This document shows, piece after piece, positions 15,976 through 38,806 of a stretch of 64,000 nucleotides of DNA (position 1 is the first letter of the stretch; each line of letters begins with the position of its first letter). Source of the stretch: Polymyxa betae A26-41 (lineage: Eukaryota; Protista; Endomyxa: Phytomyxea); the NCBI GenBank assembly GCA_003693705.1, contig RBZT01000348.1, positions 88,886 to 152,885 of the forward strand, read 5' to 3'. The translations under genes were made by a program, and so were the position numbers. The notes under the pieces were generated by a model. The model had not been told where the DNA came from, made no database searches, and saw only the letters and a program-made list of their open reading frames with translations.

Positions 15976-17793
15976 TCATTTATACATAAACATTCGTGGC
16001 GATGTGCTCTCCTCTCTCTCTGTCTCCTTCAGAGCATACCAGTATTCCCGAGCGATGGATAACGGGCCGTTCACCGTCTCGGGACCGAACCGGTACTCGG
16101 TCTCTAAAGACGCCGGTGTTTTCTTTAGGCTTAGAGAAGGCATACGAGGACCAATTGACTTCCCATTCAGCAGATGTGTGACATTCATCGTGTACATGAA
16201 CAACTTTCCATTGACCGCCTTGTCATACAGAGGCAGGATGCTATGTCCCTTGCTCTCCTAAACTACATGAGCCAGCAAGTTCTCAGTAAACAAGCACCTA
16301 CACGGGCAGCTTCGAATTTCATGCACTCCTCATAACGGGTTTTCAATGCACCTAACGATGTATCCTCGGGAAACTCAACATTAAATTCATCTAGGAGTCG
16401 CTGCCTGAGTTCATCGGAAGTCATATCATCGATTACTGGAGGGTCCAGTTCGACAAAAATCTGCAGATGACCTGGGAACAAGACAGTCAGAGATTGTTAT
16501 GAAATCCTTCAGCCGCAATGCACCGATCGATTTCTGAGGAGCTCGAAGAGTAATTTTTAAGGCCGATTCGGAGTGAAAATCATTGACGATTTCGCAGAGA
16601 ATCCTTTCCAGCAATTTGACGCTGATATCAAATAGCTTGTCAGCCGTTTTCGAGTCGCCCACCAGAATATCATCCATTCGAGTCAGTGGCAGATACTCGA
16701 ATCTGTTCGAATATCTAAGATCATCAAAAGGATGGCTTTCTTTACATTTACCCGAAGAATTGTTCGGTGTTATGATAGGCAACGAAAACGCCATGCATTC
16801 GACCCAGCCGAACCTATATGAGCTATAGCAAGCGAGCCATGAAATTCCAATCAACTGACTTGGAATGAGTATTTCAGCATTACAGTCCTTGAGAGGTCGT
16901 ACAGCTCCCGCTCAAATGAATTCAGTTCGCCTCTCAAAGACGACAACTCGTACCGTAGGTGCTGTTCGTACGTAGCCAGATTATGCCGAATAGCGAGAAC
17001 AGCCCGAGTTTTCAAGTCGAATGTTTGATTCGGCATTGGTAAATCAGGGTCGGAACAGTCCAATTGCGAACGGATCATGAACCTGCCGATCTTCGTGAAA
17101 GCGAACGCCTCCGGGCGCGATATCAACGACTGATCAGTGGGTCGCGATATGAGACTTTTTAGCACCAATCGGACGTAATCCTCATGGGCCAGAGTCAATT
17201 TATGCTCCAGCGATTTACCGAGGTCCATGAGGATACGACTGGCGGCCGAATTTGGTGACGAATCGCTGTCCATCAGCCAGAGATTGGACTCCTTCTGGTG
17301 CAGTATGATCGCAGCCGGGTTTCGAGCGCTTTGCGTCAGCGTCTTCGGCATGGTCCGAAACGATTCTGATAAATGCGACGTATTTACAGGGCGATGACCG
17401 CTAACAGCAAAGTATACATTCGACAGCGCCGATGTCATCGAAGACTTCATACAGAATATTTCAGCCATTACGTCACAAGGGAAATTATCGAGAAAGAGAG
17501 CTAACCGTTGAGCATGCCAGGCGGCATTGGTATTCGTTGGCGTATTCCATTAACCGAGGGTCACAGGAAGATTTCACGAACGATGGCAGCGCGGCGAAAT
17601 CGACCTTCGATACATGCTCGATGGATTTCAAATGCGAGGGTATATCCAGGAGCTGAACCGTCTGCGGGCCTTTCGCCTTCAAAACGCAGCGGACTTCATC
17701 GACCAATTGAGGTGTCTCCACCGACCCAGAACAATCAATACGTTTGTATATTGTCGGGGTCAAGATGCGACGATACGATCCAGGCGACAGCAT
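15976..17793 (-). CDS. PET127: Pet127 mitochondrial RNA 5'-3' exonuclease family
   Basis: Motifs DFAALPSFVKSSCD, STSSMTSALSNVYF, FMIRSQLDC, TFDLKTRAVLAIRH and FERELYDLSRTVMLKYSFQ match Pet127. The Arg-rich N-terminus resembles a mitochondrial presequence. Confidence 0.85.
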
Positions 17794-18146: not shown

Positions 18147-19787
18147 TTATATAGGAAAGGCCCAGTTTTGAGTGATAGAATCTGGGAACAACGACATTGG
18201 TGGCACTGTGGTCATCTCGACCTTCCTGCGCTTTGTCCTGTATTTCGATAGCAACTACGCAACAGATATCGTCAGGGCATCCAGCAACCGCACGAAACGC
18301 ATTTCCACTCACCGATTTATAGGTAAACGATGAGTACAGATTCAAGTCGAAGTCGACAGTTGGCAACGTTTCCATTTCAATGCAGGAAGCCAGCTTGGAG
18401 ACCTCCGGACAGAAATGCGACTTGAGAGTGACGATTTCCCATAAACTGCTCTCCAGCGCTTGCGATTTCTTCGGATCGGTCTCGGATTCTACGAACGGAT
18501 CGGCCCTGCCCACAGCCTGATCAAGCGCCTGCAAAGCTGGTGTTAGATTGCCAAGAATGGTATGGTTGCAGCGGTTACCGATGGACGATCGATCAGAACG
18601 CGACAGGACGGAAACCGGCGCAGCAGATTGAAGACGATGGCCAGGCAGAACAAAGCGCCAGACGGCGGCGATGTAATCGCTAGTCGGGCGAACTTTTTGA
18701 TGAAGGCGGCAACCAGATATGACGGCAAGTAGCTGGATCGCATGAACTTCCAGATCAAGGTCAGGAACCGCTCCCGGTAATTCGCATGAAAAATGGACGG
18801 CTTCAGCGAAGCGTACAGGTCATCGTAAAATCCCGGATAGTCGAGGTTATGCTGGGCGATCAGAATGAACAGGCCCTCCAGGGCCAGCATGGTCGCGATT
18901 CCGCCGTTCTTATAAGAATCCATCAGGAAATCGCAGAGGACCAGCGGCTGACGGAAACTCGGCAGAATCGTCATCTTGACGTTAGCCAGTATGATGCGAT
19001 GCAGGTCGCGAGGCAGGTCGGCGTCGCGCAGGATCTCCATCCAGGCCCGGTTCAGGGCGCGCGAATGCGATTTAGCTCGCGACGCCTTCCCGTGCTTGTC
19101 TGCCGGAGACAGGTATTTGCCAACCAGCGCCTGCTCCTCTTTGCCGATCGGGATCTCGACCTGGACCAGGATTAGGATCGCGTTCTCGAACAGGTGGTGA
19201 AGGACGTCATCGTCAGCATCGTTAAATTCGGACACCGATGCCAATGTCAGGTCGACGTCTTCGAACGCCTCCTGCAACGCCTTCAGCGTCCAGAACTGGA
19301 TGTCGTCATACACGCCCAGGTAATGCGTCACGAAATGGACGCGGGCTGCTTTGCCAACGTGGTGGTTGGCGATCAGCGACATGACGACTAGTTTCAGCGT
19401 CTGGAATGGGAATTCGTAGTTATGTTCAGCGCCGACCTGGCAACGGACGGCGACCAGATCCAGCAGCGAATCGATAGCGACAATTTGGAGGCCTTCATCG
19501 GTGCCGTGAAGGCAGCGACGCAAAAGTGTCACAAAAAAGTCGAGTTTTGGCTCAAGCCATGGCAAGAATTTGTTGTCGGGCCTCGGATCGAGGAACAGGC
19601 CGTACTCGCTCGCGAACGAAAACAGGATCCGACGCAGCGATTGGATGGCGGCCAGTGTGATCGTGAAAGAGTCCAGGTGCTTTTCGAGCAGAGACAGCAA
19701 TGTGACGACATCGTCGGCCTGGCTGATATCGTCGTGAATCTGGCCTTCCAGGCGCCGGATCTCCAGCACGACTTCGTCCGGCGCCAT
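18147..19787 (-). CDS. NOC4: Nucleolar complex protein 4 (CBF/Mak21 domain)
   Basis: LCDFLMDSY..GG...LALEGLFILIAQHNLDYPGFYDDLY, SSYLPSYLVAAFIKKFARLAITSPP and ALESSLWEI..LKSHFCPEVS. The start could instead be 19916. Confidence 0.92.
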
Positions 19788-20155
19788 TTCTGACCGGAAC
19801 TTTCGAAAAGACGGGGAAACTGCAATATTCCGTACGGAGTCCGAGAATCTTTTTTTATTCCTTTCTAAAAATGTTTGCCGAATTTTGTTAATGACATCAA
19901 GTTGCTTTGCTGACATCGTTATGCACGACAGATGTCAGTATATTTTCACAAAAAACATTGTGATCCTTTATACCTTCTTAAAACGAATGGCGATCGGCAA
20001 GACAAGCGAGCTGTTAACTAGAATTTACAAATCTGTGAGAGCGAATCATAAACTGCTATCTCAATGTCAAAGGGCGCCATTCAGAAGGACAAAACACTTT
20101 ATTGTGCATAAAATTTGTAAATCTATAGCACTGATGAGAATCAGGTCACGATTGC

Positions 20156-20826
20156 CTATGACAGCGACACCATCCATTCGGCAACTTTCGGGTTTTTGAT
20201 CACATTCTTATACAAGTCATTGAGATTTTCATGACGATCCAAGGCATCTTTTCCAATCGGAGACACCGCTCCTAAAGCATATTAAAACTGTTATCGATAT
20301 CGTCTTCTCAAAACATACCACGCTTGACGGAATCGATCAGACCGAACAAGGACAGATCGGCGATTGTCAGCTGGTCTCCAACAGCGAATCCCTTCGTCTG
20401 CTGCCCGGCCAGACGATTCAACGTATCGAACAGTTTCGCGAATGTATCGGCGTACACAGCCTCCATCAGCTGTCGGCGTGTCGCCTCATCTAGACCCGGC
20501 ATCGACACCAACACGACCGCGTTATAAAAGGTGTCGACAGCGGCGACAATCTCATCGACTGCCATGACCAGAATGGGGTTGGCCGGAAGCAAATCTCCTA
20601 TATTACCGACGAATCGCAGCAGGGCGGACGCCTGCGCGTACAGGGTCCCGTTCACGACCATGAGCGGGCTCTGGCCGAACGGCGCCGTCGTCCGAAACGG
20701 CTCCCATTCTTCGGGCGATAGCCGCTCGTCCTCAAATGGGATATTACTGATGTGCAGGGCGAGACGGATCGGGTTGGCTCGCCCGGTTCTGTCGAAAGTT
20801 GTCAGCTTGATGGTTGGGTATCCCAT
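20156..20826 (-). CDS. Glutathione S-transferase (sigma-like), 2 exons
   Basis: IKLTTFDRTGRANPIRLAL, IPFEDER, PFGQSP, AQASALLRFVG and GDQLTIADL. Exon 2 ends KNPKVAEWMVSLS*. Confidence 0.9.
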
Positions 20827-21354: not shown

Positions 21355-24300
21355 ATGCTAGACAACATCACCGAGGTCTGGATCCGGTCCGAGTCGGCGA
21401 GCCAGGCGCCGCGAGGCGCTCGCCCCGATCTGGCCATCGATCGTCGAACGCCTCTTACGCCACAATGGACCGCCTATCTAATTGAGAATGACATCAGGTA
21501 GATTCGCCTTGTTCGCTCGTTATCTGCCAAAAACATTGTATTTAGTGTCACTGTTGAGTGCTCTACAGAACGGGCTTATCAAGACGAGGAATATGACCGA
21601 TGCGGCTGCCGTATGGTTGCAACTGGGTCGTGGACATCAGCTCCCAAATCGGCGTTGATTTTGGGCTTACGACTTCCAGAGCCTCTTCCCTCAACGATTT
21701 CCCATGCACACGCTTTTTTTTGTCACGCTTATAAAGGCCAACCAAATTGGCATCGGCGCCTGCTTCCGTTTCTCAAAGGCGATTCCGTTCTGTATGACCT
21801 AGAGTATCTTGTAGACGAGAACGGGCAGCGTTTAGCCTCTTTCGGCCAGACTGCGGGATCTATTGGACTTGCAACGTAAGGTTTTCTTCGACTTTTTAAC
21901 ACTGTTTTCTTATTCGCAACACAACAGAGGACTGTTCGCATGGTCTCGTCAAGTCTTGGCAAACAGATTCCCCGGGGTGTCTCTGCCGTCCAATATGTTA
22001 TCAGGAATGACGATGAACAGCGTGGAGACATTGCTACGAATGGCTGAGCAATGGACACAGCAGAAACCTCGCTGTCTCGTCATCGGAGCTAATGGCCGAT
22101 GCGGTCGCGGAGCCGTCGATTTCGCTGCATCCGCCAATGTCGAAATCGTTTGTTGGACCCGGGCTGATACTGCTCGTGGTGGTCCCTTTCCAGAGTTGCT
22201 TGATTTCGATATTGTCATTAATGCGATTCGCATCGATTCTGGTGATGCGTCGCTCTTCCAACCATGGCTGACCAATGAACTCATTCGAAGAGAGCCCCGA
22301 CGTCTTTCCGTGATAGTAGATATCAGCTGCGAGCCGAATTCGATGTTAAACCCATTCCCTCTATACAAGCAGGCGACCTCATTCGAGAGACCGACGTTAA
22401 CGCTAATCGAGGCTCATGATGGACATTCTGCTCTTGATCTGATTGCTATTCCGAACCTGCCGTCTCTACTGCCAGTCGATAGCAGCAACCAGTTCAGCGC
22501 TCAGCTAGCGCCCCTGCTGTTCGACCTTCTCATAGAACGATCTGCAAAGGTCTTGTTGCCAGCCGGTGCTGCTTTCCACGCAGCTGTTTCCCCTCTGGTA
22601 ATTCCGACTTTATCGAATAACGCTGCTAGAGTTCCAGCAGCGGATACCGAGGAGATCTCGTTCGATGCGGTTGCACTTGCAGATGGCTTCAACTTTGACA
22701 GCCTTCGATCCGCTGTTGAACAGCAGATCAAGCCTATGTTGAAATCAATCATATCCGGTTTAGAATTCGGTGATAAGAGCGGCGGAGGAAAAGTTGTGCT
22801 GCAGGATTACGACTTTGTAAATCGATGTGATGATATCCGGGACATCCAGCTGGTCTACATGAACTTGATGCGCAACCAGGAGTATGCACTTACTCGAGAA
22901 CGACCTCTTCATATTCTCGTATCGCGATCTCATCTATCGGTCGCTGCTCATGGTGCAATTCTTGACCAGATTTCGGTGACGTTGCTGGCCAAGTATCTAG
23001 CAGAAGGCGATTTCTCGTTGACGAAATCAAGTTTGTCGAATTTGCAGTATTGTGATTATGCTCGATGGTTTGCCGAGCGACTGGAGGAATTGAAAACCGG
23101 TAACGATCACGATGGGCTTTTGCTTTTTCGTGATGATCAGCAGTACTGGAAGCAAACACTGCTTGCTGGTGATGGGCAAATTGTCAGCGCCCAGTTGCCA
23201 ATGGATCTATCGCCTTCTCCAATGAGCTGGTAAGTCTTATGCAAAGATGGTATTCACAGCGATATAACTTTTCGGCGATCCAGGAAATTCACGACTCAAA
23301 AACGCCATACTGTCCCACTCCTGTCATCAGTGCTGCATTATCCAATGCCTGTGCAGGCTCTGGCAGCATTGTCACTCATCATTTATCGGCGTACGAACGA
23401 GCCCGATTTTGTCATCGGGACCCGAGCTTCCTTTCGTAATAGGTGATGCCTCTTTTTCTCGGGTTTTGGATGCTTAGAATTCGCAGATATTCACTAAAGC
23501 ATATTTTTGGGCCTTTCGAGGATCGGTCCATTCTGAGGCTTTCGCTGGACAAGGACATGACTGTCAAGGCATTGCTGGAGCAATGTATGCGTCAGTGGGA
23601 AGGCGTCGCACTACATCAAGAACTACCACTGCGCCATCTCAACACTGATTATGCTCATCAAAATATCGAATTCATTGCCGAATCAGAACTTTCTGAACGA
23701 TTCAATCTCACTGAGCCGCAGGGCTCCTACCAAATTCGCTTCCGTCTGTGGCCGAATTCGTTTCTAAGTATCGATTATGATCCGGGAACATTCCTTCCTG
23801 AATCCATCACTGAACTGGCAAATCAAATCTGCTTGATTATTTCCGAACTGAACGAAAGCCTTCATATATCGACTCTGGACGTTAAATTGACGACACGAAG
23901 TGCCAGGCACCTTCTTCCAGACCCGACCCAACCCCTCGATTCTTCTTATCCTGGCCCGATTACTGAAGTTTTTAAAGAAAACTGTTTAAAAACCCCAGAG
24001 GCCATCGCCATATCGTCGGAAGGTATGCAAGAAACCGCTTTGCATCAATGCTTTAACGGCTCTGCTCAGATGTTTCTATAACGTATGGGCGACTATACGA
24101 GCATGTTTCATGGTTAGCTGGACAATTACGATCAGCTGGTATTAGACGTGGTGACATCGTTGCGATATACGGTGACCGCGTCCCGTCTGTTGTTTGGGCT
24201 ATCATGGGCGTTCTATTCTCTGGAGCTGCGTTGTCCATGATGGACCCCCGGTACCCAACCGAACGACTCATTGCATGCTTGGGCATAGCTAAACCGCGAG

Positions 24301-27300
24301 CTTGGATTGCTGTGAAATCTGCTGGCGAAATCAGCAGCGAGCTATCTTCTTTTCTTGACAAAGACTTGAACCTGGTGGCCAAAATCATACTGCCGCCGCT
24401 GGATGAGACGACTGATGTGCTATCACTTAGAGCTGCTGCACCGACTGAGGATTTGGAGTTGCGCTCAGATAATGTCGGTTTCGGCCTAGAAATCGATCAA
24501 GACGATATCGCTGTTGTGACTTTCACATCTGGCTCAACAGGGCTGCCGAAAGGAGTTTGTGGCCGTCACGGCCCTCTGACACATTTCTATCCATGGATGA
24601 GAGAAAAGTTCCAGTTCTCTAACAAAGACCATTTCAGGTTAGTGTCACCGTTTGGTCATTATTTTGAACTGATCCATTGCCAGTATGTGCTCTGGGATTG
24701 CACACGACCCTTTGCAACGCGATATTTTCACGCCATTGTTTTTCGGCGCTCGCATCTGCATTCCTAGCGACTCTACGATCAGGGAAGGCCGGTTATCTCA
24801 GTGGATGGAACATGCCAGAATCAATGTCTCATGTTTAACCCCGGCCATGGGGCAGCTTCTCACAGCGTCGTACAATAGTGGTGATACCCCACCTCTTGAA
24901 TGCTTGCGTTCCGTATTCTTTGTTGGTGACTGCTTGATGAAATCGGACGTTATTCGGCTCCGCACAATGGCACCGAACGCTACCCTTGTCAACATGTACG
25001 GGTCAACCGAGACGCAAAGAGCCGTCGGGCATCTTGTTGTACCAGTTGACATCAACCCGATAAAAGACGTCGTTCCTGTTGGGGCTGGCATGTGCGATGT
25101 TCAGCTTCTAGTTATTAATGAGGCTGGTAAACTAGCGGCCATAGGCGAGCGCGGTGAAATTTACGTTCGTTCGCCGCATCTGGCCAGAGGTTACCTTGGT
25201 CTTTCTGAACAAACGGCGGAGAAGTTCATTTTAAATCAATTCTTGGACAAGCCCGATCCACACGATAGAATGTACTTTGAAGTTGCTTTTGATCGATGCA
25301 ATCTGGGCGTAATGGTTTGAATAGGTACCGAACTGGGGATTTAGGACAATATAATTCACGCGGCTGGGTCGAGTGTTGCGGTCGTTCCGACGATCAGGTT
25401 GGCTCCATATGATCCGTGCATCTATATCTTGACTGTTAGCAGGTTAAAATCCGTGGATTCCGTATCGAGCTAGGTGAGATCAACGCTCGATTATCTCGGC
25501 ACCCTTATGTCAAAGAATGTGTCACAATTGTCGTAAACGAGGACGGCGGTAAGCACAAGTCTTTTGATGTGAATTCAACTTGATCGATGAATCGGATTTG
25601 TTGTGGCTAGATAAGCTGTTGGTTTCATTTGTTGTGTTGAACATCGAGATTGCATCCCGCGACAAAGACGTCGAAGACATAGTTGCTGTCTTAAAAGTAG
25701 ACCTACAGAGCTCGCTGCCGCATTATATGGTCCCAGCAGCAATCCATATCATCAGCTCGATGCCGCTGACGCCGAATGGCAAGATCAATCGCAGCGCTTT
25801 GCGGGCGCCGCGTCGCGAATCGATGCATCAGCCTCCGGCTATATTAAATAATACTCAGGAGAAGATCGTGCAGGTTTGGAACCGTCTCCTGCCCAACGTT
25901 GGCGAGGTCAATATCGATGCGAACTTTTTCGATCTGGGCGGTCACAGCTTGTTGGCAACGCGACTCATAATGGGTATGTAGTAAGGTCTAGTCTGTCATT
26001 CTGGCTCAAATTGTAATTCAGAGTTGTCGCGATCCTTTCATTTGACGATTCCCTTACAAACATTGTTCACAAACGCCACGATCCGTTCTCTTGCAGAAGC
26101 AATCGACTCGCTAGGCGGGGATCGCAAGTGCGACGACCAGAATAAGATGCCGAATCTTATAGAAGATGTGAACTATAATTGGTGTTCCGATATTGAAATT
26201 GCCATTCAGAAACCGAATGATGAAGTGAAGAACGTTCTCGTAAGGATGTCGCTTTCTGTTGTGCCGATCTTTCAACTTATTATAGTTGACTGGATGCACT
26301 GGTTTTGTCGGCTGCTATTTATTGGTAGAATTACTTCAGTGCCTTCCTACAGCACAAATCCATTGCACAGTTCGTGCCGAATCTGGCGCTGCCGGTATGA
26401 TCAGGTTTGAAACAGTTTTACGTATTTCTGCACTTACCGTGTTTACCTCATCATCAGGATCTGTAAAGCCCTTCAAAGTCACCTGCTCTGGCGCGACGAG
26501 TTTCAGAATCGCATTACTCCTATCATTTCGGATTTCTCAAAACCGAACGCTGGCTGGACCGACGTATTCCGCTTTGACGATACGGTTTTCCATAGTAGCT
26601 TATTTTTCTAGGAAACTGTCACGGAAATTTGCTCGAAAATTGATATCATCGTCCATAATGCTGCTCATGTTCACTGGCTGCTGCCTTATGATCGGTTGCG
26701 GGCCGTTAACGTTTCCGCTACCGAATTTTTCCTAAAGATCGCTGCCAACCTTAAGTTGAAACCATTCCATTTCATAAGGTGTGAATGTTGACTTCACTGT
26801 CACGTCTGTGCTCAAATGTTATTGCAGCACAACTTCTGTTTTGGAATCTGCCCAAAACAAAGATTCGTCCAAGAAAATGTTACTCTTGGAGTCTGCACTG
26901 AATGACAATTTTCGAGGTACTTACAATTCAGAATTGTGTTTGTCGATTTTTACATGGTCATCCATTGAACTGGAACGATTGCTCAGGTTTGAGCAGTGGC
27001 TATGCCCAATCAAAATGGGTTGCCGAAAAACTCGTGAGCGAAGCCAGTTCTAAAGGAATCACAGGTAGCTCAGTTTGTAAGGACTCGATAATGCTTCTCA
27101 TGCTATGCTTCAGCCAACATCTATCGGCTGGGTTATGTAACTGGCGATTCCCGTACCGGTATCAGCAATACCGATGATTTTTTGGTTAGGTTAATGCAAG
27201 GTATTGTAGTTCTATACGACAATCTCTGTGTAACCATTCTTCGTAGGCTGCATTGAACTGGGGTCCTGTCCTTTTATGGAGTTTGTTGACGGTAGGAGTA

Positions 27301-27946
27301 TCGATCATCCTTATTAGGCGGTTTATCAATTACAGTTTTTAGGTGATCGCGGATTCACAATCGACATGAGCCCGGCAGACTATGTAGCAAAAACCGTCGT
27401 TGAAATCGTTACCCACAAAAAGTCTGCCGGGCGGGTTTTCCATGTCACAAGCCCGAACCCTTTGCCTTTCTTGTCTTTTTTCCAGCAGATCAAAGATTAC
27501 GGTCCCGACGATGATACAGTTTATGCTGTTCTTATTGCTGATAACTTTCTCAGGTTACGAATTGGTGAATCTGCCGTATGCAACATGGCGACAAAAACTT
27601 TTGGAATCTGTCGCACGAAATGAACCCAATGCTCTAACACCGATCGTCTCGTATTTAACCGAGAACTGGACCGACGATCTTGCTAAAGGACTTCAGCTTG
27701 ATCGTTCGAATGTCTTGGAACTTTCGAGCACCAAATTTCCCTGTTTAGACAGAATCGGTCAGAATATCGCTCCATGTTGCGATCCAATGCTGATACCCTA
27801 ACCACACAGTTCATATATATCTGTCTTATCTCGTCCGATGTGGTGCTATTCCTGCTCCCAGAGATGCCCCAGATGATCATCTTCAAATTGATTGGAGCGC
27901 TATTACCGCCCAGGTACATCGTGTCACGCGAACACAGCGAAGCTGA
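21355..27946 (+). CDS. LYS1-LYS2: Fusion protein: saccharopine dehydrogenase (Lys1-like) + condensation-like + adenylation + thiolation + thioester reductase (alpha-aminoadipate reductase, Lys2)
   Basis: Lys1 motifs: [73 protein letters not shown]. The same open frame (21863-23233) continues into C-domain motifs ([27 protein letters not shown]). Lys2 A domain: [65 protein letters not shown] domain: [10 protein letters not shown] domain: [21 protein letters not shown]. Confidence 0.9.
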
Positions 27947-28116: not shown

Positions 28117-31100
28117 TTAGCCATTGATTGGAGAGAACGATGCGGCCATTTGCATTGACAGTTTTACGAAGCTATCCGATCTTTTGGCGATTTGAGTTGG
28201 TTTCTTATGATTGGCTATACTGATCAGGATTTTAGAAGCCTAAGCTCACAGTAAATTGTGGAACAAATCAAGTTAAAACATTGATGACACCTGTCGCTTT
28301 ATATCAGCGGTTACACCAAATTTCGACAATGCTAGAACTGTGTCGACCACATCGTCGTCATTCTCCAGAGCAGCTTGCACATGAACTGAGCACAACATGA
28401 AATGTGGAAACTGCTGCAGGTGATCTGCAATACCATTGTCAAGCAATGAAAGGAAGGCATTGAGGGCCAGGCGACGGCATTCCAAATCGGGATGCAATCT
28501 GGTCGCCAGGATGATTGGCATCATTCCGGCTTCAATCAAGTCAATATGAACGTTTTCATTCGCTGTAAGTTTCGCCAGCGACCGGCATCCTTTCTTCTTC
28601 AGCGCCAGATCCTGAACAAACCGCAGTTTGTCAGTATTGATACCGAAAATTCAATATCACGCTAAGATCAGACTGCAAATGAAGATAATAAGAAAAAGAA
28701 AACAGAGATCGCAATGAATTCAGGGACTGTAGATAGGGTTCCAGACCTTGCTGATGATGAAATCCTTCAAGAGGCGCACTCCACCTGAAGCTTTCACAAA
28801 CGCCACCTGCGCATCACGATACTCGGCCAGGCTGAGCAGCAACGCCAGCGACACGCGTCGGATGCGAACATCCATCGTTCTCTCATAGATGTAACCAAGT
28901 GGTTCAATCGCACCGCAAGCGGCCGAGAATCTACCATCGCAATCAGGCAGCAGACATATCATCTACACGGTAGTACCGCTTGCAATCGTCATTAACCAGC
29001 AAACAGTTCAATGCGAATACAGATAGTTCCACGATTGTTTCATCGACATTTGATCCACCGGGTCGATGTATGTCACTAAAATTGATCAGCTGGCTAGAAC
29101 CGATCAACGACGCCCATCGGTACCGAATTGGATGCACCATCGCCTTGACCAGAATTTCGAGCCGTTCCGGGCTTAACGCGTAATTCTCGAAATAATGAGC
29201 AATGTCGGAAAGAGCATGCAGAATCAGCTGCTGTGCCTACATATCAAGAGCATTACCGAGCTGCCGGACCAACTCAAAATCAATTACGTTGGCATCGGTT
29301 TGGACCGATCTGTGCTTTGAAAGTGTCTCGAGACTCTCAAATCCGGCGCAGTTCACAAACTCGACGTGGTTAATCGTGTTCCGGGCCACATTCCTCAGTA
29401 TATGAATACAATCGATCGGGTCACCGATCTGAGAATCAAACAAGAATCAGGGGCCAGTTCGCCAACCGCTGGGTCGTACCGTCCCGGCCAGAATCAGGTC
29501 GGTGATTAGCCGCAGACCGCGACGCTCGACAATGGCATTGGCGTATTCTGGATTGTGCGAGATGGCCGCCAGCAAGTATAACGACTGGATCCGAAGCTTC
29601 TCTTTCGGGCTGCGGAGCAGGGTCAGTACGGCGCCGAACCCTTCGCTGGAGCACTCCAGCAGCATGTCCATGGTCTCGCGCGAATCCAGGAACATACCCA
29701 GCGTCTCTGATCCGAGCATCGCTGCAATACACATATTCAGCTACTGTCCGACCGTACCGCCCCTTCCATGACCAGCCCACCTGTTCGCTCATCGGGGCAG
29801 GTTGAGATATGTGCCAGAGCAGGAATCAGATTATCAGATTTGCCACGAAGAGCCACCGAACTGAACAACACAGAGATAACCATGTTAGAAACATTATTAA
29901 AACGAACATTAGATTTGGGACGACGCCGACGTACTGACCCTTCGTATTTGACGAACGAATGAACGATCTCGGCGACACATGTGAAGATTGGGACGTCTTC
30001 GCTGAAGCAGAGATCGATCAAGGTCCGGACATATTCATCTTTGGCGAGGTATCGGGTTCCCTGAGCCAGCTCATCAGATGGCCAGCACAAACCACACCCG
30101 TTGTTGGTTGATGAATTATACCTGCCCAGTCCGTACGACGTTTACGAGCGCTAACAGACAGAGCCATTTGGTCGAGCGATCTTTCGACTGAATATAGACC
30201 AGCAACAATGATACGAAATTCTCCTTCTCCATCAGATCCGCTAAACACAACCTTAGATGATGGACATGACAGAAACACAACTTGGTAAAGAACTGTCAAA
30301 TTGCTCTTTGAGAATGTAGTTGCGTACCGATGCTTTCTGCTTTCAAGATGATATTGATAAGTGAGATGAAGGTAAGTTTCTGTGTGAGACCATCTGGTGA
30401 TCTCAACATAGCCGGCAAACATCGTGATTCGAAGAAAGGACGATCATACGCGTACACCTTGAACTCAGGATGACATGATAATCGACATAGAGCCAGAGCA
30501 GTGAACCGCTCCGTCAGCATCGCCTGGATCGACAATCAGAACCCCGAAAACCCTAAACCCTCAACCCTCGACCTGATCTCCAGCCCCGTATTTCAGCAGA
30601 GCCTGCATGATATCGGCGATATTCGTCAAACTGAAATATCGGGCTTGTTTCACCATGGTCGAAGTCAATGAGAACACCAGATTAGCCAGGGCCTGCGCTC
30701 CCATCGCCTACACACGATCAGCCGCACAACTCCGAGGGAGCCGTACGTGCCCACCTGGCTCATGGCATTGGCCAGGGAACAGTTGATGAAATCTGTGAGA
30801 ATTTCGAAGAAGTTGGTCTCGATGAGGCCTGAAGGAGTTCACCGATGTTAGAAGCAGGTAACCCTAAAACCCTAACCGAGATGGCATCGGACGTTGAGGA
30901 CCAGGTTGGACAGGGCCGAGACGGCGTTGGCTTCGGCGACGGCATCACGATCCCGGCTGAGCAAAGCCGTGACGATGGGATCATCGGCGATCACTTCCTG
31001 ACCCAGATCGAGCTCATCATTCCTGAGACAGAATCCGTCAGTTTAGAGCTTCAATACAGCTGAACAAGATCACGTTTGTGATGGATCATTCTCGTTATCA

Positions 31101-34100: not shown

Positions 34101-37100
34101 GGCGTACTTGGAGATGCGCGAGTCGACACGTTTCGAGAGCGCAGTCTTTGACAGTCGTTGTAGAAGATCATCGGATGGATTGTCCAGACGATGAATGTCG
34201 CTATTATTGGGACCTAGAGGACATGCCTATACTGGGATATCTGCATATGCAACCCTTAAACCCTAGCCCACGTACTTCATGATGTAGATTGGACAAGGCC
34301 CAGATACAGGCCAGTTGGACATCGACATCCGCCGATTCGATGAGCTGCGCGAAAATGTCGTCTTCGCTGGCCCGTGCGATCTTCAGCTGAACATCCTTGA
34401 ACGATAAAATATGCCCGATCGCCCACGACACTGCAACGATACTGGGTTTTTAGGGTACAGCGACCAACGCGTGTCGTACCGGAATGGCGAATTTCCCGAT
34501 CGGAATCGTTCAGGCATTTCAGAAGCGGGAACACCCCATCTTGGACGATGAACTGACGGAATTGCGGAAAGTACGCGATGTTCGCGAACGTACGCGCCAC
34601 CAAACGACGAACCTGCCAACAATATTAAAGAAATCTCCCAAAAATCAATGTAAATTGATCAAACCAAACGTAAGAAATCATCAAGACCACATTGTCAAAT
34701 TTCAGCGTAAAAAAGGCGAAGTTTCTAGCAGACCTGAACGTCAGAATGGTCGAGCATCTGTACGAGAGCCTGAACGCCGCGTTCTTCCCCGAAACTCTTT
34801 ACACAGATATCGTACACGGTCAGCTGGGTCAGAAGCTGAGCCCTATCGACCAATTGAGAACCCTAAAACCCTAGACCCGTCAAAACGCCCGACATCTGTC
34901 GCGTACAGGCCACCTCCCGCTTGCGCCATTCGGCACCCTCTTGCAGCAGGAACTGGGTGATACCTGCCTGCAGCATGAACCGAACATTCTTCTCGTGCAG
35001 CGCCAATGTCGACAGTGCACTAGCACGAGAGTCAGCACGACCCCCCAATACGACACCCAAGCGGTACCTTAAGGCTTGAACTTTCGCGGTCGGGTCCATA
35101 CATCTGGCCACAGCAATGAAGGCCTCCATCACCGATTGTACAGCGAACATGGAATGCATGTACATGGTCGATACAATATTGATCATGAACAGCGACGTAT
35201 GCTATTATAGCGCATTGAGCAAATGAACGGAGGGGACGGTACGGCCGCGAGAGACCTGAAGCAGCTCGACATCACCGGTCTCGATAAAGGCGGGCAGACC
35301 ACGGAACACGAACGGGCCAGCATCGGTGAAATGTTCCTGATTGATCAGATGGAAGCTCATATTGGCCAACACGTACATACAGCACCGACGTTCCTCTATG
35401 GGTTTGGCATCAATAAACCCAATCGCACGCCAAAATTCGATCATGGCAAATGATTGGAAAACAAAACAATGAGAACAGTATGTCCAAAACACAGAGAAAG
35501 ATCGATAAACTGACCGAGATCTCCCTGTGAGCTCTCACATAATGTCAGGAACGATTTGACAATGTTCACATCCATGAGATCAACAGGTGTATGTTCATGA
35601 CTAGCGAACGATCCTGCAGCCCAGATCAGATAGACGACCATGACGCCAACGGGGCCAGTACCGACCCAGGGCGTTGAACGCGTATTTGCGGAAGGCGGCG
35701 TGCGGCGACCGGACGAACGGGGCGATCACCTGAATGACACGCGTCCGTTTCAGTTCTTCGAGGATTTCGGGGACGCCGGCGCATAGACGTGATAGAATGT
35801 GAACGCCCAGTGATTGCAGCGACATCGAGCCTGGAGCAGTCTCAGAACCGACGCCAGCGACAACGATTGACGATGGCGAACCTTTCCGAACGAATTTGAC
35901 GACGAAGTCGAGAAGTTTGGTCCCGATCATGGTACGTTGTACTTCTTCGCTGTCGCAGATGTTCAACAAGAACCGCAGCGCTTCTTGTTGGACTTCGGAC
36001 GACTCCTAAACCGGTTATAAATCATCGGATGGATTTCCCGAATATGGCGCGACCTGTCCCATGAAATGCTCGATCAAGGGTAGGTTTCGATACCACTTGT
36101 ACGACGCCCGAACCTATCAATGTCCATCATTACAGTATCATTAGAAACGCACCAAACAAGAAATCGTGACAATCGAAAACGGGCAATGACGCAGCGATAC
36201 CTTGGGCGCCTTCGTAACATTACTGAGGACTTCAGCGACGGCTAACTGAAATGGTGGATCAGGCCATCGCTGAGCGATCTCCAGGATCTGTTTAACGGAA
36301 ACGGCGGCGAACGTCTCCCGCGCCACATTATCACGCAGCATGGTCACGATGAACGATAGCGCCGACATGGCCGTCTCCATGGAATCCGTCCCGAGGATGT
36401 TCTGGACAGCCTGACAAAACCCTAAACCCTAACAACACCCCCTGTTGAAACTCGCGGACCTGAAACGATGCCCTCGAGCTCAGGAACTCATGCAATGCCT
36501 CATTGGCGGCCAGATTTGATAGCAGCATGGCGAAATAACGCTGAACTTCGCTGTCTTTACTGCTCGCTAATTCGAAGAAGACAGTCAGTTGCATCTGTAG
36601 CTCATCCATAATGAGTCCATGCGAGGCGATATTCGCCGCCAAGTTCGATAGAGAGAGCAGCGCATATCGAGTTAATTCATTATCTTGTTCCATGGAAGTA
36701 ACCTGAGCGGGTTGTTAGTTGAATAGGACACGACGCGGAGGGGTTGGTCGTACCAGAAGCGAGAGCGGTTGTAGGATCTGCTTGACGCAGATGTACCGAT
36801 GATATTCGACATTCTCGGATATGATCGCGCACATGATACAGCTGAAGAACAGCGACGCGCTATCGTTATCTTTAAGAGCGGCCGTGATCACATCTAGACA
36901 TCCTGTGGACCAATCCCATCAATAAATCAATACGGAGCTCTATCGGATACCACAACCTGCATGGATCATATCGCCCTGATAGGCCCGATTCGACGACAGA
37001 TTCGCCAGAGCCCTCGTAGCGCCCTGACGCACACGCGCATCCCTCGACATCGCCAAATGCACCAAGTTATCGATTCCTGTACGACGATTTAATCGTCACC

Positions 37101-38806
37101 TGGGCAAGCACGTCGCCCGCACCGTTCGCGTAGACGATGTTCGGGTGCGAGTCCGGGTTTGACGCCAACGATGCGAGCGTGTTGGCGGCGTGCATCTGCA
37201 CGTCCGGGTTCAGGTCCATCAGAGCCAGTACCATGATGGCGTTGATCGAAGACGGCTGCAGCAGTTCGGCGTGGGCTTCGATCAGGTTGGCGAGGCCGGA
37301 GATCGTGGCCGCGATCTCGACGAGGACGTCGGCCCGGTCGATCGTATCCACAAGGTTCACCAATTCCTGAACAGAATTTTGAAAGAAGTTCGCATCATGT
37401 AACAGATTTGGCGACTTTATGTGCATTGAGGCGGAGGAGCTCGAGCTTGAGATTGTCGTCCGATGTGAGACCACGTAAGGCTGAAACGGCGTGCGTGATC
37501 GACTCGACGTCCATGAGCGGATTGGCGATCATATTAACCAAGGGTCCGATAATGATCTTGAGCTTCTTCGTCAGTTTCTTATTCGACGACACCTACAGCA
37601 TCGTCGTTCAACATCGACCTGCAGAATCCTGTCCAAAAAACGCCAAACATTCTGGACGGTCAGGACGGCACATTCGTGCAGATCGCGGTCCGATGAATCG
37701 ATCAGGTCCAGTATGGATGGCATGTTCTTCATGAGCAGTTTGTGTGTGTCGAAGTCGGCAGCCAGATTTGCCACAGCCATGATCGCATATCTTCAGGCCA
37801 GGGTCAGTACGACCAGCGTCAGTTCCCAGCCACGCACCGTTGCGTGTCCAGGTCGTTGCCACCGTTGATGGCGATCGGCAGCAGATGGTCCAGTATGCCG
37901 AACGCGACCAGGTCCTTGCGCAGCTCGGAATGGGCGGCGATGTTCCCGAAGCACAGCGCGGCGTATCGCTGGCAGATGTGATCGCCGGAGTTCAACAGGC
38001 CCAGGACGGCATGCAGACCTGCATAATCGCATCAACCGACAGCGTGCTCGCCAAAGTTTGACAAAACTCAATTCAACCATTTGCAACCTAAATGCGAGTT
38101 GCAAAGCAAACAAGATGATCATGACCGAATCAGCAATGACTAAAGAGCAAGTATTGGTCGTACCGTACTGGCGCTTCATCTTGACGATTGCGAATTGGGT
38201 CTCCTCCTCCGTGGAGAAATGGGCGAAACTGAATGCCGCCTGGCGTCGTTCATTGGTGTCGCGATCCTCGCCGGCGAACGTAATCATCTCCTCGATGGGT
38301 TTTGCGGCGGCCGCCGAGACTCGGCCCAGGGCCTCATCGTTATCTAAAACTGGAAATCGGAAACCCAACCCAATGGCGTTGTCTTCCAATATGGACCTTC
38401 GGTGCCGGCGCCGTTCAACCCGATGCCACCGGCTTTCGACGCTCGCACATTCGCCGATTTATTCTCTCCGCCATCGCTGTCTTCCTCATCTGATAGAGCA
38501 GCCGGTTTCGTATCGTATTCGACCTGGACAAGGTTGCGGATTACAAGGACAGCTGCAGACTGGGCGACGACCGAACCTGATCGTCGACGAAGCTGTCGGA
38601 ATCGGCGTCCTTCGATTGCTGGCCTTCTTCAGCAATTACCGCCGATTCTGTCTTGGCTGGAACATCGCCGTCTGACATATTGTGAGATTATGATCGTTGG
38701 TACCCTCACCTGTGTCATCTTGAAACACGTTATTATTGCTGTAAGCGATGAACCCGTTTCGACGATTGAACAGAGACACTGTTGAGACACCATCGCCCGC
38801 GTTCAT
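28117..38806 (-). CDS. Giant armadillo-repeat protein (Vac8-like repeats), many introns
   Basis: Repeated ARM units across ~10 kb, e.g. YALLSLSNLAAN, VQRYFAMLLSNLAAN, VQMHAANTLASLASN, IRYCLALMLANLAGN and VQLACIWALSNL. Acidic N-terminal exons start at ATG 38806. The last exon ends SFSPING*. Confidence 0.8.
30542..30569 (-). repeat. Intronic telomere-type repeat
   Basis: The intron reads gtcGAGGGTTGAGGGTTTAGGGTTTTCGGGG...cag on the transcribed strand. Confidence 0.85.
30859..30877 (-). repeat. Intronic telomere-type repeat forming the 5' splice site
   Basis: G|GTTAGGGTTTTAGGGTTA. Splicing here joins ...VRCHL-G-LIETNFFEI in frame. Confidence 0.85.
31928..31943 (-). repeat. Intronic telomere-type repeat
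   Basis: gtctgaTTAGGGTTTAGGGTTTcg...cag. Confidence 0.85.
33612..33622 (-). repeat. Telomere-type motif forming the 5' splice site
   Basis: CAG|GTTAGGGTTTc. Splicing joins PHTSVQ to RSVAAAFLNLA in frame. Confidence 0.75.
34251..34269 (-). repeat. Degenerate intronic telomere-type repeat
   Basis: GGGCTAGGGTTTAAGGGTT. Confidence 0.7.
34444..34456 (+). repeat. Intronic telomere-type motif in the opposite orientation
   Basis: GGGTTTTTAGGGT on the + strand. In the pre-mRNA it reads ACCCTAAAAACCC, at the branch-point position. Confidence 0.7.
34859..34874 (-). repeat. Intronic telomere-type repeat
   Basis: CTAGGGTTTTAGGGTT upstream of a TAG acceptor. Confidence 0.85.
36416..36432 (-). repeat. 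Intronic telomere-type repeat abutting the 3' splice site
   Basis: TTAGGGTTTAGGGTTTTgtcag|. Splicing joins SFQ to AVQNILGTDSMET in frame. Confidence 0.85.

What the first reader, a model, noticed from the sequence alone, without database searches (positions are those of the whole stretch)
21355..27946. Single-polypeptide Lys1-Lys2 fusion (saccharopine dehydrogenase joined to an NRPS-like aminoadipate reductase)
Seen: the ORF 21863-23233 runs without a stop or a required intron from the Lys1 Rossmann domain and its terminal LPSLLP motif into a condensation-like domain. Later exons give Lys2-type A ([21 protein letters not shown]), T (GGHSL) and R domains. Known: in fungi Lys2 and Lys1 are separate genes of the alpha-aminoadipate lysine pathway. 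They are not consecutive, because Lys9 (saccharopine reductase) acts between them. Inference: a fusion that skips the middle step, in an apparently non-fungal protist, suggests a scaffold for a Lys9 partner or a rewired route in which the extra domain handles the released semialdehyde. I do not recall this architecture being described.
Basis: partly seen in the sequence, partly recalled or inferred. Interest (0 to 1): 0.88.

Follow-up and report, generated by a model that had tools for sequence, protein, structure and literature searches.

The report
Lys1-like domain fused onto Lys2
A root parasite of sugar beet (almost certainly Polymyxa betae) makes its lysine-pathway enzyme aminoadipate reductase as one 1,858-residue protein with an altered copy of saccharopine dehydrogenase at its front end; this design is shared by a few other protists and I found no paper that describes it.

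Summary
Window 21355-27946 (+) is one gene of 21 exons with a 5,577-nt CDS (1,858 aa). Spliced transcript contigs from two studies cross it at 100% identity. The end of the Lys1-like domain and the start of the next domain lie in one exon with no stop.

The C-terminal ~1,450 aa are a Lys2-type aminoadipate reductase. It has a near full-length condensation-like domain that lacks the catalytic His, then A, T and R domains. It carries the only Lys2-type A domain found in this genome.

The interpretation needs correcting:
- The genome, almost certainly Polymyxa betae, also has a separate Lys9-Lys1 fusion with canonical Lys1 residues. No pathway step is skipped, and no Lys9-scaffold or rewired route is needed.
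- The fused domain is a distinct Lys1 paralogue. The catalytic base K77 is Arg, E78 and K13 are lost, and latch residue D319 is Pro. Its dinucleotide site has the Thr/Arg solution of the NADPH-specific human LOR domain. The nicotinamide pocket, H96, K99, R18 and R131 are kept.
- The architecture is not unique. It occurs in Phalansterium, Rigifila and several uncultured eukaryotes, and the fused domains form one clade. In one of these organisms the gene lies next to a Lys9-Lys1 fusion.

I found no paper describing it. The role of the N-terminal domain is unresolved. An earlier first-reader note (s1-665363) had already noted the Lys9-Lys1 locus.

The parts
21355..27946 (+). Whole gene: 21 exons, CDS 5,577 nt = 1,858 aa. 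Exons: 21355-21497, 21546-21875, 21928-23229, 23284-23442, 23487-24022, 24070-24637, 24684-25271, 25325-25397, 25443-25548, 25611-25973, 26022-26239, 26286-26404, 26458-26563, 26612-26778, 26828-26916, 26987-27064, 27114-27200, 27247-27291, 27343-27501, 27554-27757, 27810-27946.
   Evidence: Joints of the spliced contigs X1 and X5. GT..AG sites and open phase for every exon. Colinear tblastn of the 1,853-aa homologue P0002 from 21376 to 27943. Introns after 27064 rest on consensus and homology, apart from 27201-27246 (loose end).
21355..22560 (+). Lys1-like (saccharopine dehydrogenase-fold) domain, exons 1-2 and the first ~210 codons of exon 3. The catalytic Lys77 position is Arg (GLR, about 21668-21676). 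The Asp227-Ile228 position is Thr-Arg (WTR, about 22154-22162). The Asp319-His320 position is Pro-Asn (IPNLPSLLP, about 22442-22468).
   Evidence: PDB 2q99/3ugk at E 1.5e-25 and 1e-18. PF05222 hit at window 21511-21858 in the own-genome search. Residue audit against 67 canonical Lys1 domains.
22561..23900 (+). Condensation-like domain (the ADA/C* equivalent, but including the N-lobe). The motif-3 position reads AAHGAILDQ, so the first His is kept, the second (catalytic) His is Gly, and the Gly after Asp is Gln. It covers the rest of exon 3, exon 4 and most of exon 5.
   Evidence: hhalign to the family C-domain profile A1: exon 3 tail on columns 137-231 (93%), exon 4 on 274-300 (78%), exon 5 on 305-480 (97%). 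Relatives reach Pfam Condensation 8-454/456 at E 1.6e-59. The window's own pieces do not reach Pfam significance. The first ~130 profile columns (about 22561-22930) have no detectable similarity.
23901..25800 (+). Adenylation domain (AMP-binding plus AMP-binding_C) with the Lys2-type signatures [10 protein letters not shown] and YGSTETQR.
   Evidence: Pfam PF00501 and PF13193. NCBIfam TIGR03443 (L-aminoadipate-semialdehyde dehydrogenase) is the best family for exons 5, 6 and 7, colinear on positions 167-654. Among the top hits, the two signatures occur together only in eukaryotic Lys2-like proteins.
25859..26110 (+). Thiolation (carrier) domain with the phosphopantetheine-attachment serine in GGHSL.
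   Evidence: PF00550 at E 3.5e-7. Exon 10 on TIGR03443 positions 784-888.
26286..27946 (+). Thioester reductase (R) domain, with the NAD(P)-binding TGxTGFxG motif in exon 12 and YxxxK (YAQSK) in exon 16.
   Evidence: PF07993 hits. tblastn to P0002 residues 1262-1851. Exon translations.

Best explanation
This is one gene and one mRNA for a 1,858-residue protein with the domain order Lys1-like, condensation-like, adenylation, thiolation, reductase. It belongs to a small, conserved protist family with that architecture.

The C-A-T-R part is the organism's only alpha-aminoadipate reductase (the Lys2 step of the alpha-aminoadipate lysine pathway). By analogy with fungal Lys2:
- the A domain adenylates the 6-carboxyl of L-2-aminoadipate and loads it on the phosphopantetheinyl arm of the T domain;
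- the R domain reduces the thioester with NADPH and releases aminoadipate semialdehyde;
- the condensation-like domain has lost the catalytic His and most likely serves, like the fungal ADA domain, to make the A domain competent.

The semialdehyde is then converted to lysine by a separate Lys9-Lys1 fusion protein encoded elsewhere in the genome.

The N-terminal domain is therefore not the pathway's Lys1. It is an old paralogue under purifying selection. It keeps the nicotinamide pocket, H96, K99 and the two carboxylate-binding arginines. It has Arg in place of the acid-base Lys77, has lost the K99-D319 inter-lobe latch, and carries an NADP(H)-type dinucleotide site.

Its role is inferred only. 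My split is:
- About 55%: an NADPH-dependent reductive catalyst with a changed reaction. Candidates are reductive amination of 2-oxoadipate to aminoadipate (the step before Lys2), reductive condensation of the semialdehyde with glutamate, or reduction of its cyclic imine.
- About 45%: a ligand- or NADPH-binding regulatory or structural module acting on the adjacent activating domain.
For: One gene:
- Spliced contigs from two studies match at 100% identity. X1 is 5,685 nt, which equals 51 nt of 5' UTR plus the 5,577-nt CDS plus about 57 nt.
- The junction lies inside exon 21928-23229, and every exon is open in phase.
- Homologues are single uninterrupted ORFs in genomic contigs of other organisms: P0002 in L017, P0319 in L019, P0152 in L020.

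Lys2 identity:
- TIGR03443 is the best family for exons 5, 6 and 7, colinear; exon 10 also matches it (784-888) but scores slightly higher on two NRPS models. The Phalansterium member scores 1036 bits against a cut-off of 1030.
- The Lys2 signature motifs are shared with named eukaryotic Lys2-like proteins and are absent from about 90 bacterial hits.
- There is only one Lys2-type A domain in the genome. The second NAD_binding_4 locus has no A or T domain.

Pathway context in the own genome:
- A homocitrate-synthase-like gene, a homoaconitase-like gene, three PPTase hits, and Lys9-Lys1.
- No lysA and no DapF.

Family and single origin:
- The same Pfam architecture occurs in P0002, P0003, P0004, P0062, P0042, P0170 and P0171.
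- The fused Lys1-like domains form one clade, SH-aLRT 99.
- All fusion proteins fall in one 99-supported clade of the Lys2-part tree.

Co-occurrence: in L019 the fusion gene lies 57 nt from a canonical Lys9-Lys1 gene.

N-domain audit:
- Of 72 positions at least 85% conserved in canonical Lys1, only K13, K77, E78 and D319 are consistently lost.
- Asp227 is never Asp, and Arg228 is invariant. This matches Ser266/Arg267 of the NADPH-specific human LOR domain (PMC9490328, PMC13763937).
- The Ala-Gly nicotinamide pocket is kept (PMC9490328).
- K77 and H96 are the acid-base catalysts. This rests on the title of Kumar et al. 2012 as cited in PMC9490328, and on PMC13763937, where they are conserved as Lys93/His111 of LOR.
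Against: - No enzymology exists for any member of the family.
- Contigs cannot show transcript ends, so a shorter Lys1-only or Lys2-only isoform is not excluded. The two raw-read RNA runs laid no reads.
- The joined protein was never scored as a whole, so the TIGR03443 cut-off could not be tested for this gene.
- Homocitrate synthase and homoaconitase are exon-wise sums just below the curated cut-offs, and could be paralogues.
- The genome is a 91%-complete draft (PMC6328671), so 'only one Lys2' and 'no DAP genes' are not proof of absence.
- Arg in place of the catalytic Lys, together with a broken latch, fits a pseudoenzyme as well as it fits a new chemistry.
- A T/G-R pair at the 227/228 position also occurs in a minority of stand-alone Lys1 proteins.
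Confidence: 0.8

Rival explanations
1. One reading: a functional Lys1 (the last step) is fused to Lys2 (the third-last step). The protein would then scaffold a Lys9 partner, or run a rewired route in which the extra domain handles the released semialdehyde.
For: The domain is clearly Lys1-derived and strongly conserved. It keeps H96, K99, R18, R131 and the nicotinamide pocket. A role at the semialdehyde/saccharopine node is chemically conceivable and is one of my sub-hypotheses.
Against: A canonical Lys9-Lys1 fusion exists in the same genome and is transcribed. In another organism it lies next to the fusion gene. The fused domain lacks the Lys77 base, E78, K13 and the D319 latch, and has an NADP-type site instead of the NAD-type Asp. 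Lys1 in the biosynthetic direction needs NAD+.
Confidence: 0.08
2. The protein is not a lysine-biosynthesis enzyme. It would be an NRPS-like enzyme of another pathway, for example making pipecolate from aminoadipate (R domain, then imine reduction by the N-domain) or an opine-like N-substituted aminoadipate.
For: The N-domain looks NADPH-dependent and has lost the residue that deprotonates the lysine amine, which suits reduction of a preformed imine. The C-domain N-lobe is retained, unlike in fungal Lys2. Cyanobacterial C-A-T-R NRPSs are about 40% identical in the R domain.
Against: It is the only Lys2-type gene in a genome that otherwise appears to have the aminoadipate pathway and lacks lysA and DapF. 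It is linked to Lys9-Lys1 in L019. The Lys2 signature motifs are intact. Both carboxylate-binding arginines are retained, which suggests a dicarboxylate ligand rather than a monocarboxylate cyclic imine.
Confidence: 0.1
3. Artefact: two adjacent genes were merged by assembly or read-through, or the sequence is contaminant DNA misassigned to this genome.
For: Transcript contigs can bridge neighbouring genes; X5's contig runs about 4.6 kb beyond this gene. The assembly was binned from infected roots (PMC6328671). An identical 308-aa fragment is filed under Beta vulgaris.
Against: There is no stop and no intergenic space: both domains share one exon. The same architecture appears as single ORFs in at least eight other 90%-identity clusters, from transcriptomes, metatranscriptomes and genomic contigs. 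Intron size and GT..AG style match the Lys9-Lys1 locus on another contig of the same genome. The beet entry is a 983-nt unplaced contig, best read as parasite contamination of the beet assembly.
Confidence: 0.02

Closest known systems
Fungal Lys2-type alpha-aminoadipate reductase (S. cerevisiae Lys2, P. chrysogenum Lys2, C. subvermispora NPS3; NCBIfam TIGR03443)
   Same: Colinear ADA/C-like, A, T, R order. TIGR03443 is the best family for exons 5, 6 and 7; exon 10 also matches it. It has the signature motifs GIAHDPxQRD and YG[ST]TETQR, the GGHSL carrier serine and the YxxxK reductase motif.
   Different: About 380 extra N-terminal residues form a Lys1-like domain. The N-terminal domain is near full length and includes the C-domain N-lobe with a degenerate motif 3. 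The fungal ADA domain keeps only the C-lobe and lacks motifs C1-C5 (PMC7884236). On the Lys2-part tree the fusion family sits apart from the Holomycota and Heterolobosea clades.
Yeast Lys1, saccharopine dehydrogenase (NAD+, L-lysine-forming; PDB 2q99, 3ugk)
   Same: Same two-lobe fold by sequence (E 1e-25 and 1e-18). R18, H96, K99, E122, R131, the GxGxxG motif, the Ala-Gly nicotinamide pocket and about 58 of 72 conserved positions are kept.
   Different: K77 is Arg, E78 and K13 are lost, D319-H320 is Pro-Asn, and D227-I228 is Thr-Arg. It is fused to another enzyme and forms a separate clade.
[quoted passage not shown]
   Same: A Lys1-fold domain at the N-terminus of a bifunctional lysine-pathway protein. 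A hydroxyl residue plus Arg replaces the NAD-type Asp, which in LOR gives NADPH specificity (PMC9490328, PMC13763937).
   Different: LOR keeps the catalytic Lys (Lys93) and the Lys114-Asp358 latch (PMC13763937), whereas this family has lost both. The fusion partner is Lys2-type, not Lys9-type. A separate AASS-like LKR-SDH gene exists in this genome on contig C839.
C* domain of ACV synthetase module 1 and the ADA domain of NPS3
   Same: A condensation-derived, catalytically inactive domain directly upstream of an aminoadipate-activating A domain. In those enzymes it is required for adenylation (PMC7884236).
   Different: Here and in relatives the domain spans nearly the whole Pfam Condensation model (8-454/456 in P0003). 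This fits that paper's suggestion that these enzymes descend from an NRPS elongation module.
Lys9-Lys1 fusion proteins (reverse order to AASS), e.g. P0058, P0072, P0097 and the contig C1 gene of this genome
   Same: Another lysine-pathway fusion in the same organisms. The Lys1 part is the nearest canonical relative of the fused domain on the tree.
   Different: It joins consecutive steps and keeps canonical GLKE, WD and IDH residues.

Membership tests
Lys2-type alpha-aminoadipate reductase (TIGR03443, EC 1.2.1.95) | Adenylation domain of the Lys2 type (family-specific signatures, best match to the Lys2 model rather than to generic A domains) | tested here: met
   Exon 7 scores 224 bits on TIGR03443 against 137 on generic TIGR01733. 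Exon 6 scores 139 against 105. [10 protein letters not shown] and YGSTETQR are present, and co-occur only in eukaryotic Lys2-like proteins.
Lys2-type alpha-aminoadipate reductase (TIGR03443, EC 1.2.1.95) | Carrier domain with the phosphopantetheine serine, and a PPTase in the genome | tested here: met
   PF00550 at E 3.5e-7 with GGHSL. Three ACPS-domain loci in the own genome. Which of them is the Lys5 equivalent was not determined.
Lys2-type alpha-aminoadipate reductase (TIGR03443, EC 1.2.1.95) | C-terminal NADPH-dependent thioester reductase domain | tested here: met
   PF07993 in exons 12, 14 and 16. TGxTGFxG and YAQSK motifs. Colinear with the R domain of P0002.
Lys2-type alpha-aminoadipate reductase (TIGR03443, EC 1.2.1.95) | Whole-protein score over the curated cut-off (1030 bits) | tested here: inconclusive
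   The four exons scored sum to about 460 bits. Family member P0171 scores 1036 bits and P0002 scores 856 bits.
Lys2-type alpha-aminoadipate reductase (TIGR03443, EC 1.2.1.95) | Reduces L-2-aminoadipate to the semialdehyde; complements lys2 | not testable with these tools
   Needs enzymology or yeast complementation.
Lys1 saccharopine dehydrogenase (NAD+, L-lysine-forming, EC 1.5.1.7) | Homology and fold of the AlaDh_PNT two-lobe type | tested here: met
   PDB 2q99/3ugk at E 1.5e-25 and 1e-18. PF05222 over its cut-off at window 21511-21858.
Lys1 saccharopine dehydrogenase (NAD+, L-lysine-forming, EC 1.5.1.7) | Acid-base pair Lys77 / His96 | tested here: not met
   His96 is kept. Lys77 is Arg in the window and in 4 of 5 family members that cover the site (Gly in one), against Lys in 63 of 67 canonical domains.
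Lys1 saccharopine dehydrogenase (NAD+, L-lysine-forming, EC 1.5.1.7) | NAD-type Asp at the end of the second Rossmann strand (Asp227) | tested here: not met
   Thr-Arg in the window. No family member has Asp, and the following Arg is invariant. This is the same solution as NADPH-specific human LOR Ser266/Arg267 (PMC9490328).
Lys1 saccharopine dehydrogenase (NAD+, L-lysine-forming, EC 1.5.1.7) | Inter-lobe latch Lys99-Asp319 | tested here: not met
   Lys99 is kept. Asp319 is Pro in all 8 family members and the window, against Asp in 65 of 67 canonical domains. The latch is described in PMC13763937.
NRPS condensation domain (PF00668) | Catalytic motif HHxxxDG with the second His | tested here: not met
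   The window reads AHGAILDQ. Six family members have H[ESRQ]xxxD[AKE] and two have no His at all. The second His is absent in all.
NRPS condensation domain (PF00668) | Sequence membership at Pfam's threshold | tested here: not met
   No Pfam Condensation hit for the window's pieces or anywhere in the genome. Homology is shown only through the family profile, whose other members do pass Pfam.

The most novel reading that the evidence does not exclude
The N-terminal Lys1 paralogue is a new enzyme: an NADPH-dependent reductive aminase that makes L-2-aminoadipate from 2-oxoadipate. It would keep the 2-oxo-dicarboxylate site (R18, R131, H96) and have lost the residues that serve the lysine amine (K77 base, E78, K13, D319). 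It would hand its product to the adjacent activating and adenylation domains. In these protists, two fusion proteins would then cover steps 4-5 and 6-7 of the aminoadipate pathway, and the usual aminotransferase step would be replaced.
Probability: 0.15. Interest if true: 0.8.

Novelty: new variant of a known kind. Interest (0 to 1): 0.6.

Why it matters
- It places a fungal-type aminoadipate lysine pathway in a plasmodiophorid, an obligate crop-root parasite and virus vector. Older surveys assigned the diaminopimelate route to Rhizaria (PMC3287585), and lysine synthesis was called compromised in the relative P. brassicae (PMC4471660). Pathway enzymes that the plant host lacks are potential selective targets.
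- It defines a conserved protist form of Lys2 with a near full-length condensation domain. This is direct comparative support for the idea that Lys2 and ACVS module 1 descend from an NRPS elongation module (PMC7884236).
- It provides a natural experiment on the Lys1 fold. The paralogue has the catalytic Lys swapped for Arg, the lobe latch removed and the cofactor site switched, while everything else is kept. Its activity, or lack of one, can be tested directly.
- Together with the Lys9-Lys1 fusion, it is a possible rare genomic marker for deep eukaryote relationships, if the fusion arose once (Amoebozoa, CRuMs, Rhizaria).

Tried and rejected
- Raw-read RNA runs X16 and X11 (same species label) laid no reads on the stretch, so they are no test of expression or transcript ends. 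The label is probably that of the host plant.
- Pfam on the window's own ORF pieces gave only a sub-threshold AlaDh_PNT_C hit and no Condensation hit. A genome-wide PF00668 search found nothing. Homology had to be shown through PDB and family profiles.
- The first exon alone finds nothing in PDB.
- The A-domain region search was swamped by multi-module bacterial NRPSs and gave no taxonomic information.
- tblastx of the relatives' contigs L017 and L018 against the window showed no synteny beyond the gene.
- Neighbours in the window are unrelated to lysine metabolism: GST, CBF/Mak21, Pet127 and unassigned ORFs.
- The primary papers on yeast Lys1 residues (PMC3174770, PMC3297426) are not held. 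The roles of K13, E78 and D319 beyond what PMC13763937 and PMC9490328 state rest on my own recollection of the Cook/West work.
- I considered that the C621 NAD_binding_4 locus is a second Lys2 and rejected it, because it has no A or T domain.
- Exons were searched and aligned one by one by reference. In some searches they were added as separate fragments to alignments; one search printed them on one display row.
- No structure or complex prediction was run, because neither would separate the functional hypotheses.


Full report
**What is in the sequence**

- Its residues 66-232 align to yeast saccharopine dehydrogenase (PDB 2q99/3ugk) residues 191-354 of 373 at E 1.5e-25, through the LPSLLP motif to within about 11 residues of the yeast C-terminus.
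- The preceding ORF piece 21613..21879 aligns to yeast residues 59-145 at E 1e-18.
- Downstream ORF pieces carry AMP-binding, AMP-binding_C, PP-binding and NAD_binding_4.
- The quoted motifs are all present.

**One transcript**

Six runs from two studies hold 76% of the stretch's sampled words. Laying two of them shows why. Each contributes one contig (X1 5,685 nt, X5 10,290 nt) that matches at 100% identity and skips short GT..AG introns of 44-70 nt (15 listed, one more counted). So these are spliced RNA assemblies.

With the cut offsets applied, the first 15 exons are all flanked by AG and GT and are open in the required phase. I placed the remaining exons from consensus sites, phase and colinear homology to the 1,853-aa relative P0002. 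One of these introns, 27201-27246, is also supported by the loose end.

The model has 21 exons. The ATG is at 21355 and the stop codon ends at 27946. The CDS is 5,577 nt, or 1,858 aa. X1's length equals 51 nt of leader plus the CDS plus about 57 nt.

The Lys1-like C-terminus and the following domain lie in a single exon (21928-23229). No splice choice or intergenic space could separate them.

Caveats:
- Contigs cannot show transcript ends.
- The two raw-read RNA runs laid nothing.
All searches and alignments were done exon by exon, by reference.

**The organism**

The assembly has 1,001 contigs and 27,085,814 bases. The Polymyxa betae draft genome is described as 1,001 contigs and 27,085,946 bp, at 45.1% GC (PMC6328671). 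A 308-aa fragment identical to exon 3 is filed as a hypothetical protein on a 983-nt contig of Beta vulgaris, the parasite's host.

**The Lys2 part**

- NCBIfam TIGR03443 (L-aminoadipate-semialdehyde dehydrogenase) is the best-scoring family for exons 5, 6 and 7, in colinear order (positions 167-253, 270-459, 461-654). Exon 10 also matches it (784-888, 67.8 bits) but scores slightly higher on two NRPS models. It clearly beats the generic A-domain model.
- The Phalansterium relative passes the curated cut-off over the whole model (1036 against 1030 bits).
- Among the 120 closest R-domain relatives, the motifs GIAHDPxQRD and YG[ST]TETQR occur together only in eukaryotic Lys2-like proteins. One is a chytrid protein named L-aminoadipate-semialdehyde dehydrogenase. 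None of the roughly 90 bacterial NRPS/PKS proteins has both.
- The genome has no second Lys2-type A domain. The only other strong NAD_binding_4 locus has no A or T domain.

**The 'condensation-like' domain**

Fungal Lys2 enzymes have an N-terminal ADA domain. It is a C-domain remnant that lacks motifs C1-C5 and is needed for adenylation. ACVS module 1 has the equivalent C* domain (PMC7884236).

In relatives of this gene the domain covers almost the whole Pfam Condensation model (8-454/456, E 1.6e-59 in P0003). The window's own copy is too diverged for Pfam. It does align colinearly to a profile of the family's domain: the exon 3 tail on columns 137-231, exon 4 on 274-300, and exon 5 on 305-480 of 481.

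At motif 3 the window reads AHGAILDQ, six relatives read H[ESRQ]xxxD[AKE] and two have no His there. The first His is kept in the window and those six, and the catalytic second His is missing in all. This is the Lys2 family's own N-terminal domain in a less reduced, non-catalytic form. It is not an added module.

**The pathway is not missing a step**

The own genome holds two loci with Lys9-type domains and four loci with a Lys1-type (AlaDh_PNT_N) hit.
- On contig C1, a Lys9-type gene is followed on the same strand by a Lys1-type gene. A 49-nt GT..AG intron joins the Lys9 C-terminal tail in frame to the Lys1 N-terminus.
- A spliced transcript contig from a further run has this intron removed. 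The protein called on that contig runs from the Lys9 tail straight into Lys1.
- That Lys1 is canonical: GLKE, FAHCFK, WD, IDH.
- Lys9-Lys1 fusions of about 830 aa exist in other organisms.
- Contig C839 carries an AASS-like LKR-SDH gene.
- The genome also has a homocitrate-synthase-like gene, a homoaconitase-like gene and three PPTase loci.
- lysA and DAP epimerase were not found.

The aminoadipate route with ordinary last steps is thus the simplest reading.

**The fused domain is a distinct paralogue**

I aligned 67 canonical Lys1 domains (stand-alone and Lys9-Lys1) with 8 fused domains and the window's three exons as fragments. There are 72 positions at least 85% conserved in canonical Lys1.
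- The fused family keeps about 58 of them. These include R18, H96, K99, E122, R131, GxGxxG and the Ala-Gly pair that makes room for the nicotinamide (PMC9490328).
- It consistently loses only four: K13, K77 (to Arg), E78, and D319 (to Pro).
- At the Asp227 position, which binds the NAD ribose, no fused domain has Asp, and the next residue is always Arg.

For comparison, in the NADPH-specific human LOR domain:
- Ser266/Arg267 occupy the Asp227 place and hold the 2'-phosphate.
- The catalytic Lys93/His111 (yeast K77/H96) are conserved.
- A Lys-Asp latch between the lobes (yeast K99-D319) closes the active site.
- Two arginines hold the saccharopine carboxylates (PMC9490328 and PMC13763937).

So the fused domain has LOR's cofactor solution. 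It lacks the base and the latch that both Lys1 and LOR keep.

The pattern is targeted change against a background of strong constraint, with branch lengths like those of canonical Lys1. It argues for a kept but altered function. It does not show whether that function is catalysis of a different reductive reaction or ligand and cofactor sensing.

**Distribution and history**

An exhaustive profile-free search with exon 3 found long proteins that match it near their N-termini. Pfam confirms AlaDh_PNT + Condensation + AMP-binding + PP-binding + NAD_binding_4. Members include:
- Phalansterium solitarium (Amoebozoa) and Rigifila ramosa (CRuMs) from EukProt;
- metatranscriptome contigs of 5.9 kb encoding 1,927 aa;
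- genomic contigs in which the gene is a single uninterrupted ORF.

The fused Lys1-like domains form one clade (SH-aLRT 99). On a tree of the A-T-R part rooted with cyanobacterial C-A-T-R proteins, all ten fusion proteins fall in one clade (99). That clade also holds chlorarachniophyte and Arcella C-A-T-R proteins without the extra domain. Heterolobosean and holomycotan Lys2 lie outside it. One old fusion with later losses is the simplest account; lateral transfer is not excluded.

In contig L019 (also in NCBI assembly GCA_041443025.1) the fusion gene lies tail to tail, 57 nt from a canonical Lys9-Lys1 gene. This links the two proteins functionally. It also shows again that organisms with the fused domain keep a normal Lys1.

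**How it most likely works**

Shown:
- one gene, one spliced mRNA contig and the domain order;
- Lys2-type A, T and R domains;
- the degenerate C-like domain;
- the altered Lys1-like domain;
- canonical Lys9-Lys1 elsewhere in the genome.

Inferred from the families:
- The A domain adenylates the distal carboxyl of aminoadipate.
- The T domain carries it.
- The R domain releases the semialdehyde with NADPH.
- The C-like domain activates the A domain, as ADA does.

Unresolved: the role of the N-domain. The retained 2-oxo-dicarboxylate/saccharopine-carboxylate arginines, the nicotinamide pocket and the NADP-type site suggest a reductive reaction on a dicarboxylate. Losing the base that deprotonates the lysine amine suggests the amine partner is no longer lysine. 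The most attractive specific idea is reductive amination of 2-oxoadipate to aminoadipate. The two fusion proteins would then cover steps 4-5 and 6-7. I put this at about 15-20%. Arg in place of the catalytic Lys and a missing latch fit a non-catalytic sensor equally well (about 45%).

**Novelty**

No paper in the searchable library mentions this architecture. Predicted proteins with it sit unremarked in public collections. It is a new variant of a known enzyme, not a new kind of system. An earlier first-reader note of this scan (s1-665363) had already noted the Lys9-Lys1 locus on other DNA of this genome. First-reader notes on the remodelled active site and the degenerate C domain agree with what I found.

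Noticed in passing
L013:3060-6295 (G000 contig C1, about 37060-40295, + strand): A Lys9-Lys1 fusion gene, in the reverse order to animal and plant AASS. A 49-nt intron (L013 4813-4861) joins the Lys9 tail in frame to a canonical Lys1. The spliced transcript contig L016 (SRR18189689) has this intron removed, but keeps an in-frame stop upstream of the Lys9 C-terminal tail (about L013 4640-4710, probably an unspliced intron) that splits its ORF into 402 and 405 aa.
   Followed up: partly
L019:1157-9348: In an uncultured, 70%-GC eukaryote (ENA ERZ28008908; also NCBI GCA_041443025.1), the Lys1-like-Lys2 fusion gene (P0319, 1,931 aa) and a canonical Lys9-Lys1 fusion (779 aa, cut by the contig end) are convergent neighbours 57 nt apart. 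This amounts to a two-gene lysine cluster.
   Followed up: partly
L014 (G000 contig C839, about 184500-188300, - strand): An AASS-like gene with AlaDh_PNT_N upstream of Sacchrp_dh_C (LKR-SDH order). The genome therefore carries at least three, possibly four, Lys1-fold domains and two Lys9-fold domains. A fourth AlaDh_PNT_N hit on contig C569:1139-1264 was not identified.
   Followed up: no
window 22466-23229 (protein P0001): A 308-aa fragment 100% identical to exon 3 is deposited as a hypothetical protein of Beta vulgaris (KMS94531.1) on a 983-nt contig. This is most likely parasite DNA in the sugar-beet assembly.
   Followed up: partly
window 21271 to beyond 28000 (run X5, contig record 2): The X5 transcript contig is 10,290 nt, about 4.6 kb longer than this gene needs. 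It probably runs into the convergent downstream gene(s) at 28270-30420 (- strand ORFs with no Pfam match). It shows that contigs in this compact genome can bridge genes.
   Followed up: no
G000 contigs C729:76790-78211 and C592:173615-176084: Homocitrate-synthase-like and homoaconitase-like genes are present, while lysA and DAP epimerase were not detected. An obligate biotroph appears to keep a fungal-type lysine pathway, although lysine synthesis was reported as compromised in its relative P. brassicae (PMC4471660).
   Followed up: partly
proteins P0318, P0321, P0320, P0322: Chlorarachniophyte (Amorphochlora) and related C-A-T-R Lys2-like proteins of about 1,590-1,660 aa nest inside the fusion clade but lack the Lys1-like domain. 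This suggests secondary loss within Rhizaria.
   Followed up: no
window 20308-20826 (-), 18543-19916 (-), 16851-17468 (-): The upstream neighbours are a GST, a CBF/Mak21-family protein and Pet127. None is related to lysine metabolism.
   Followed up: yes
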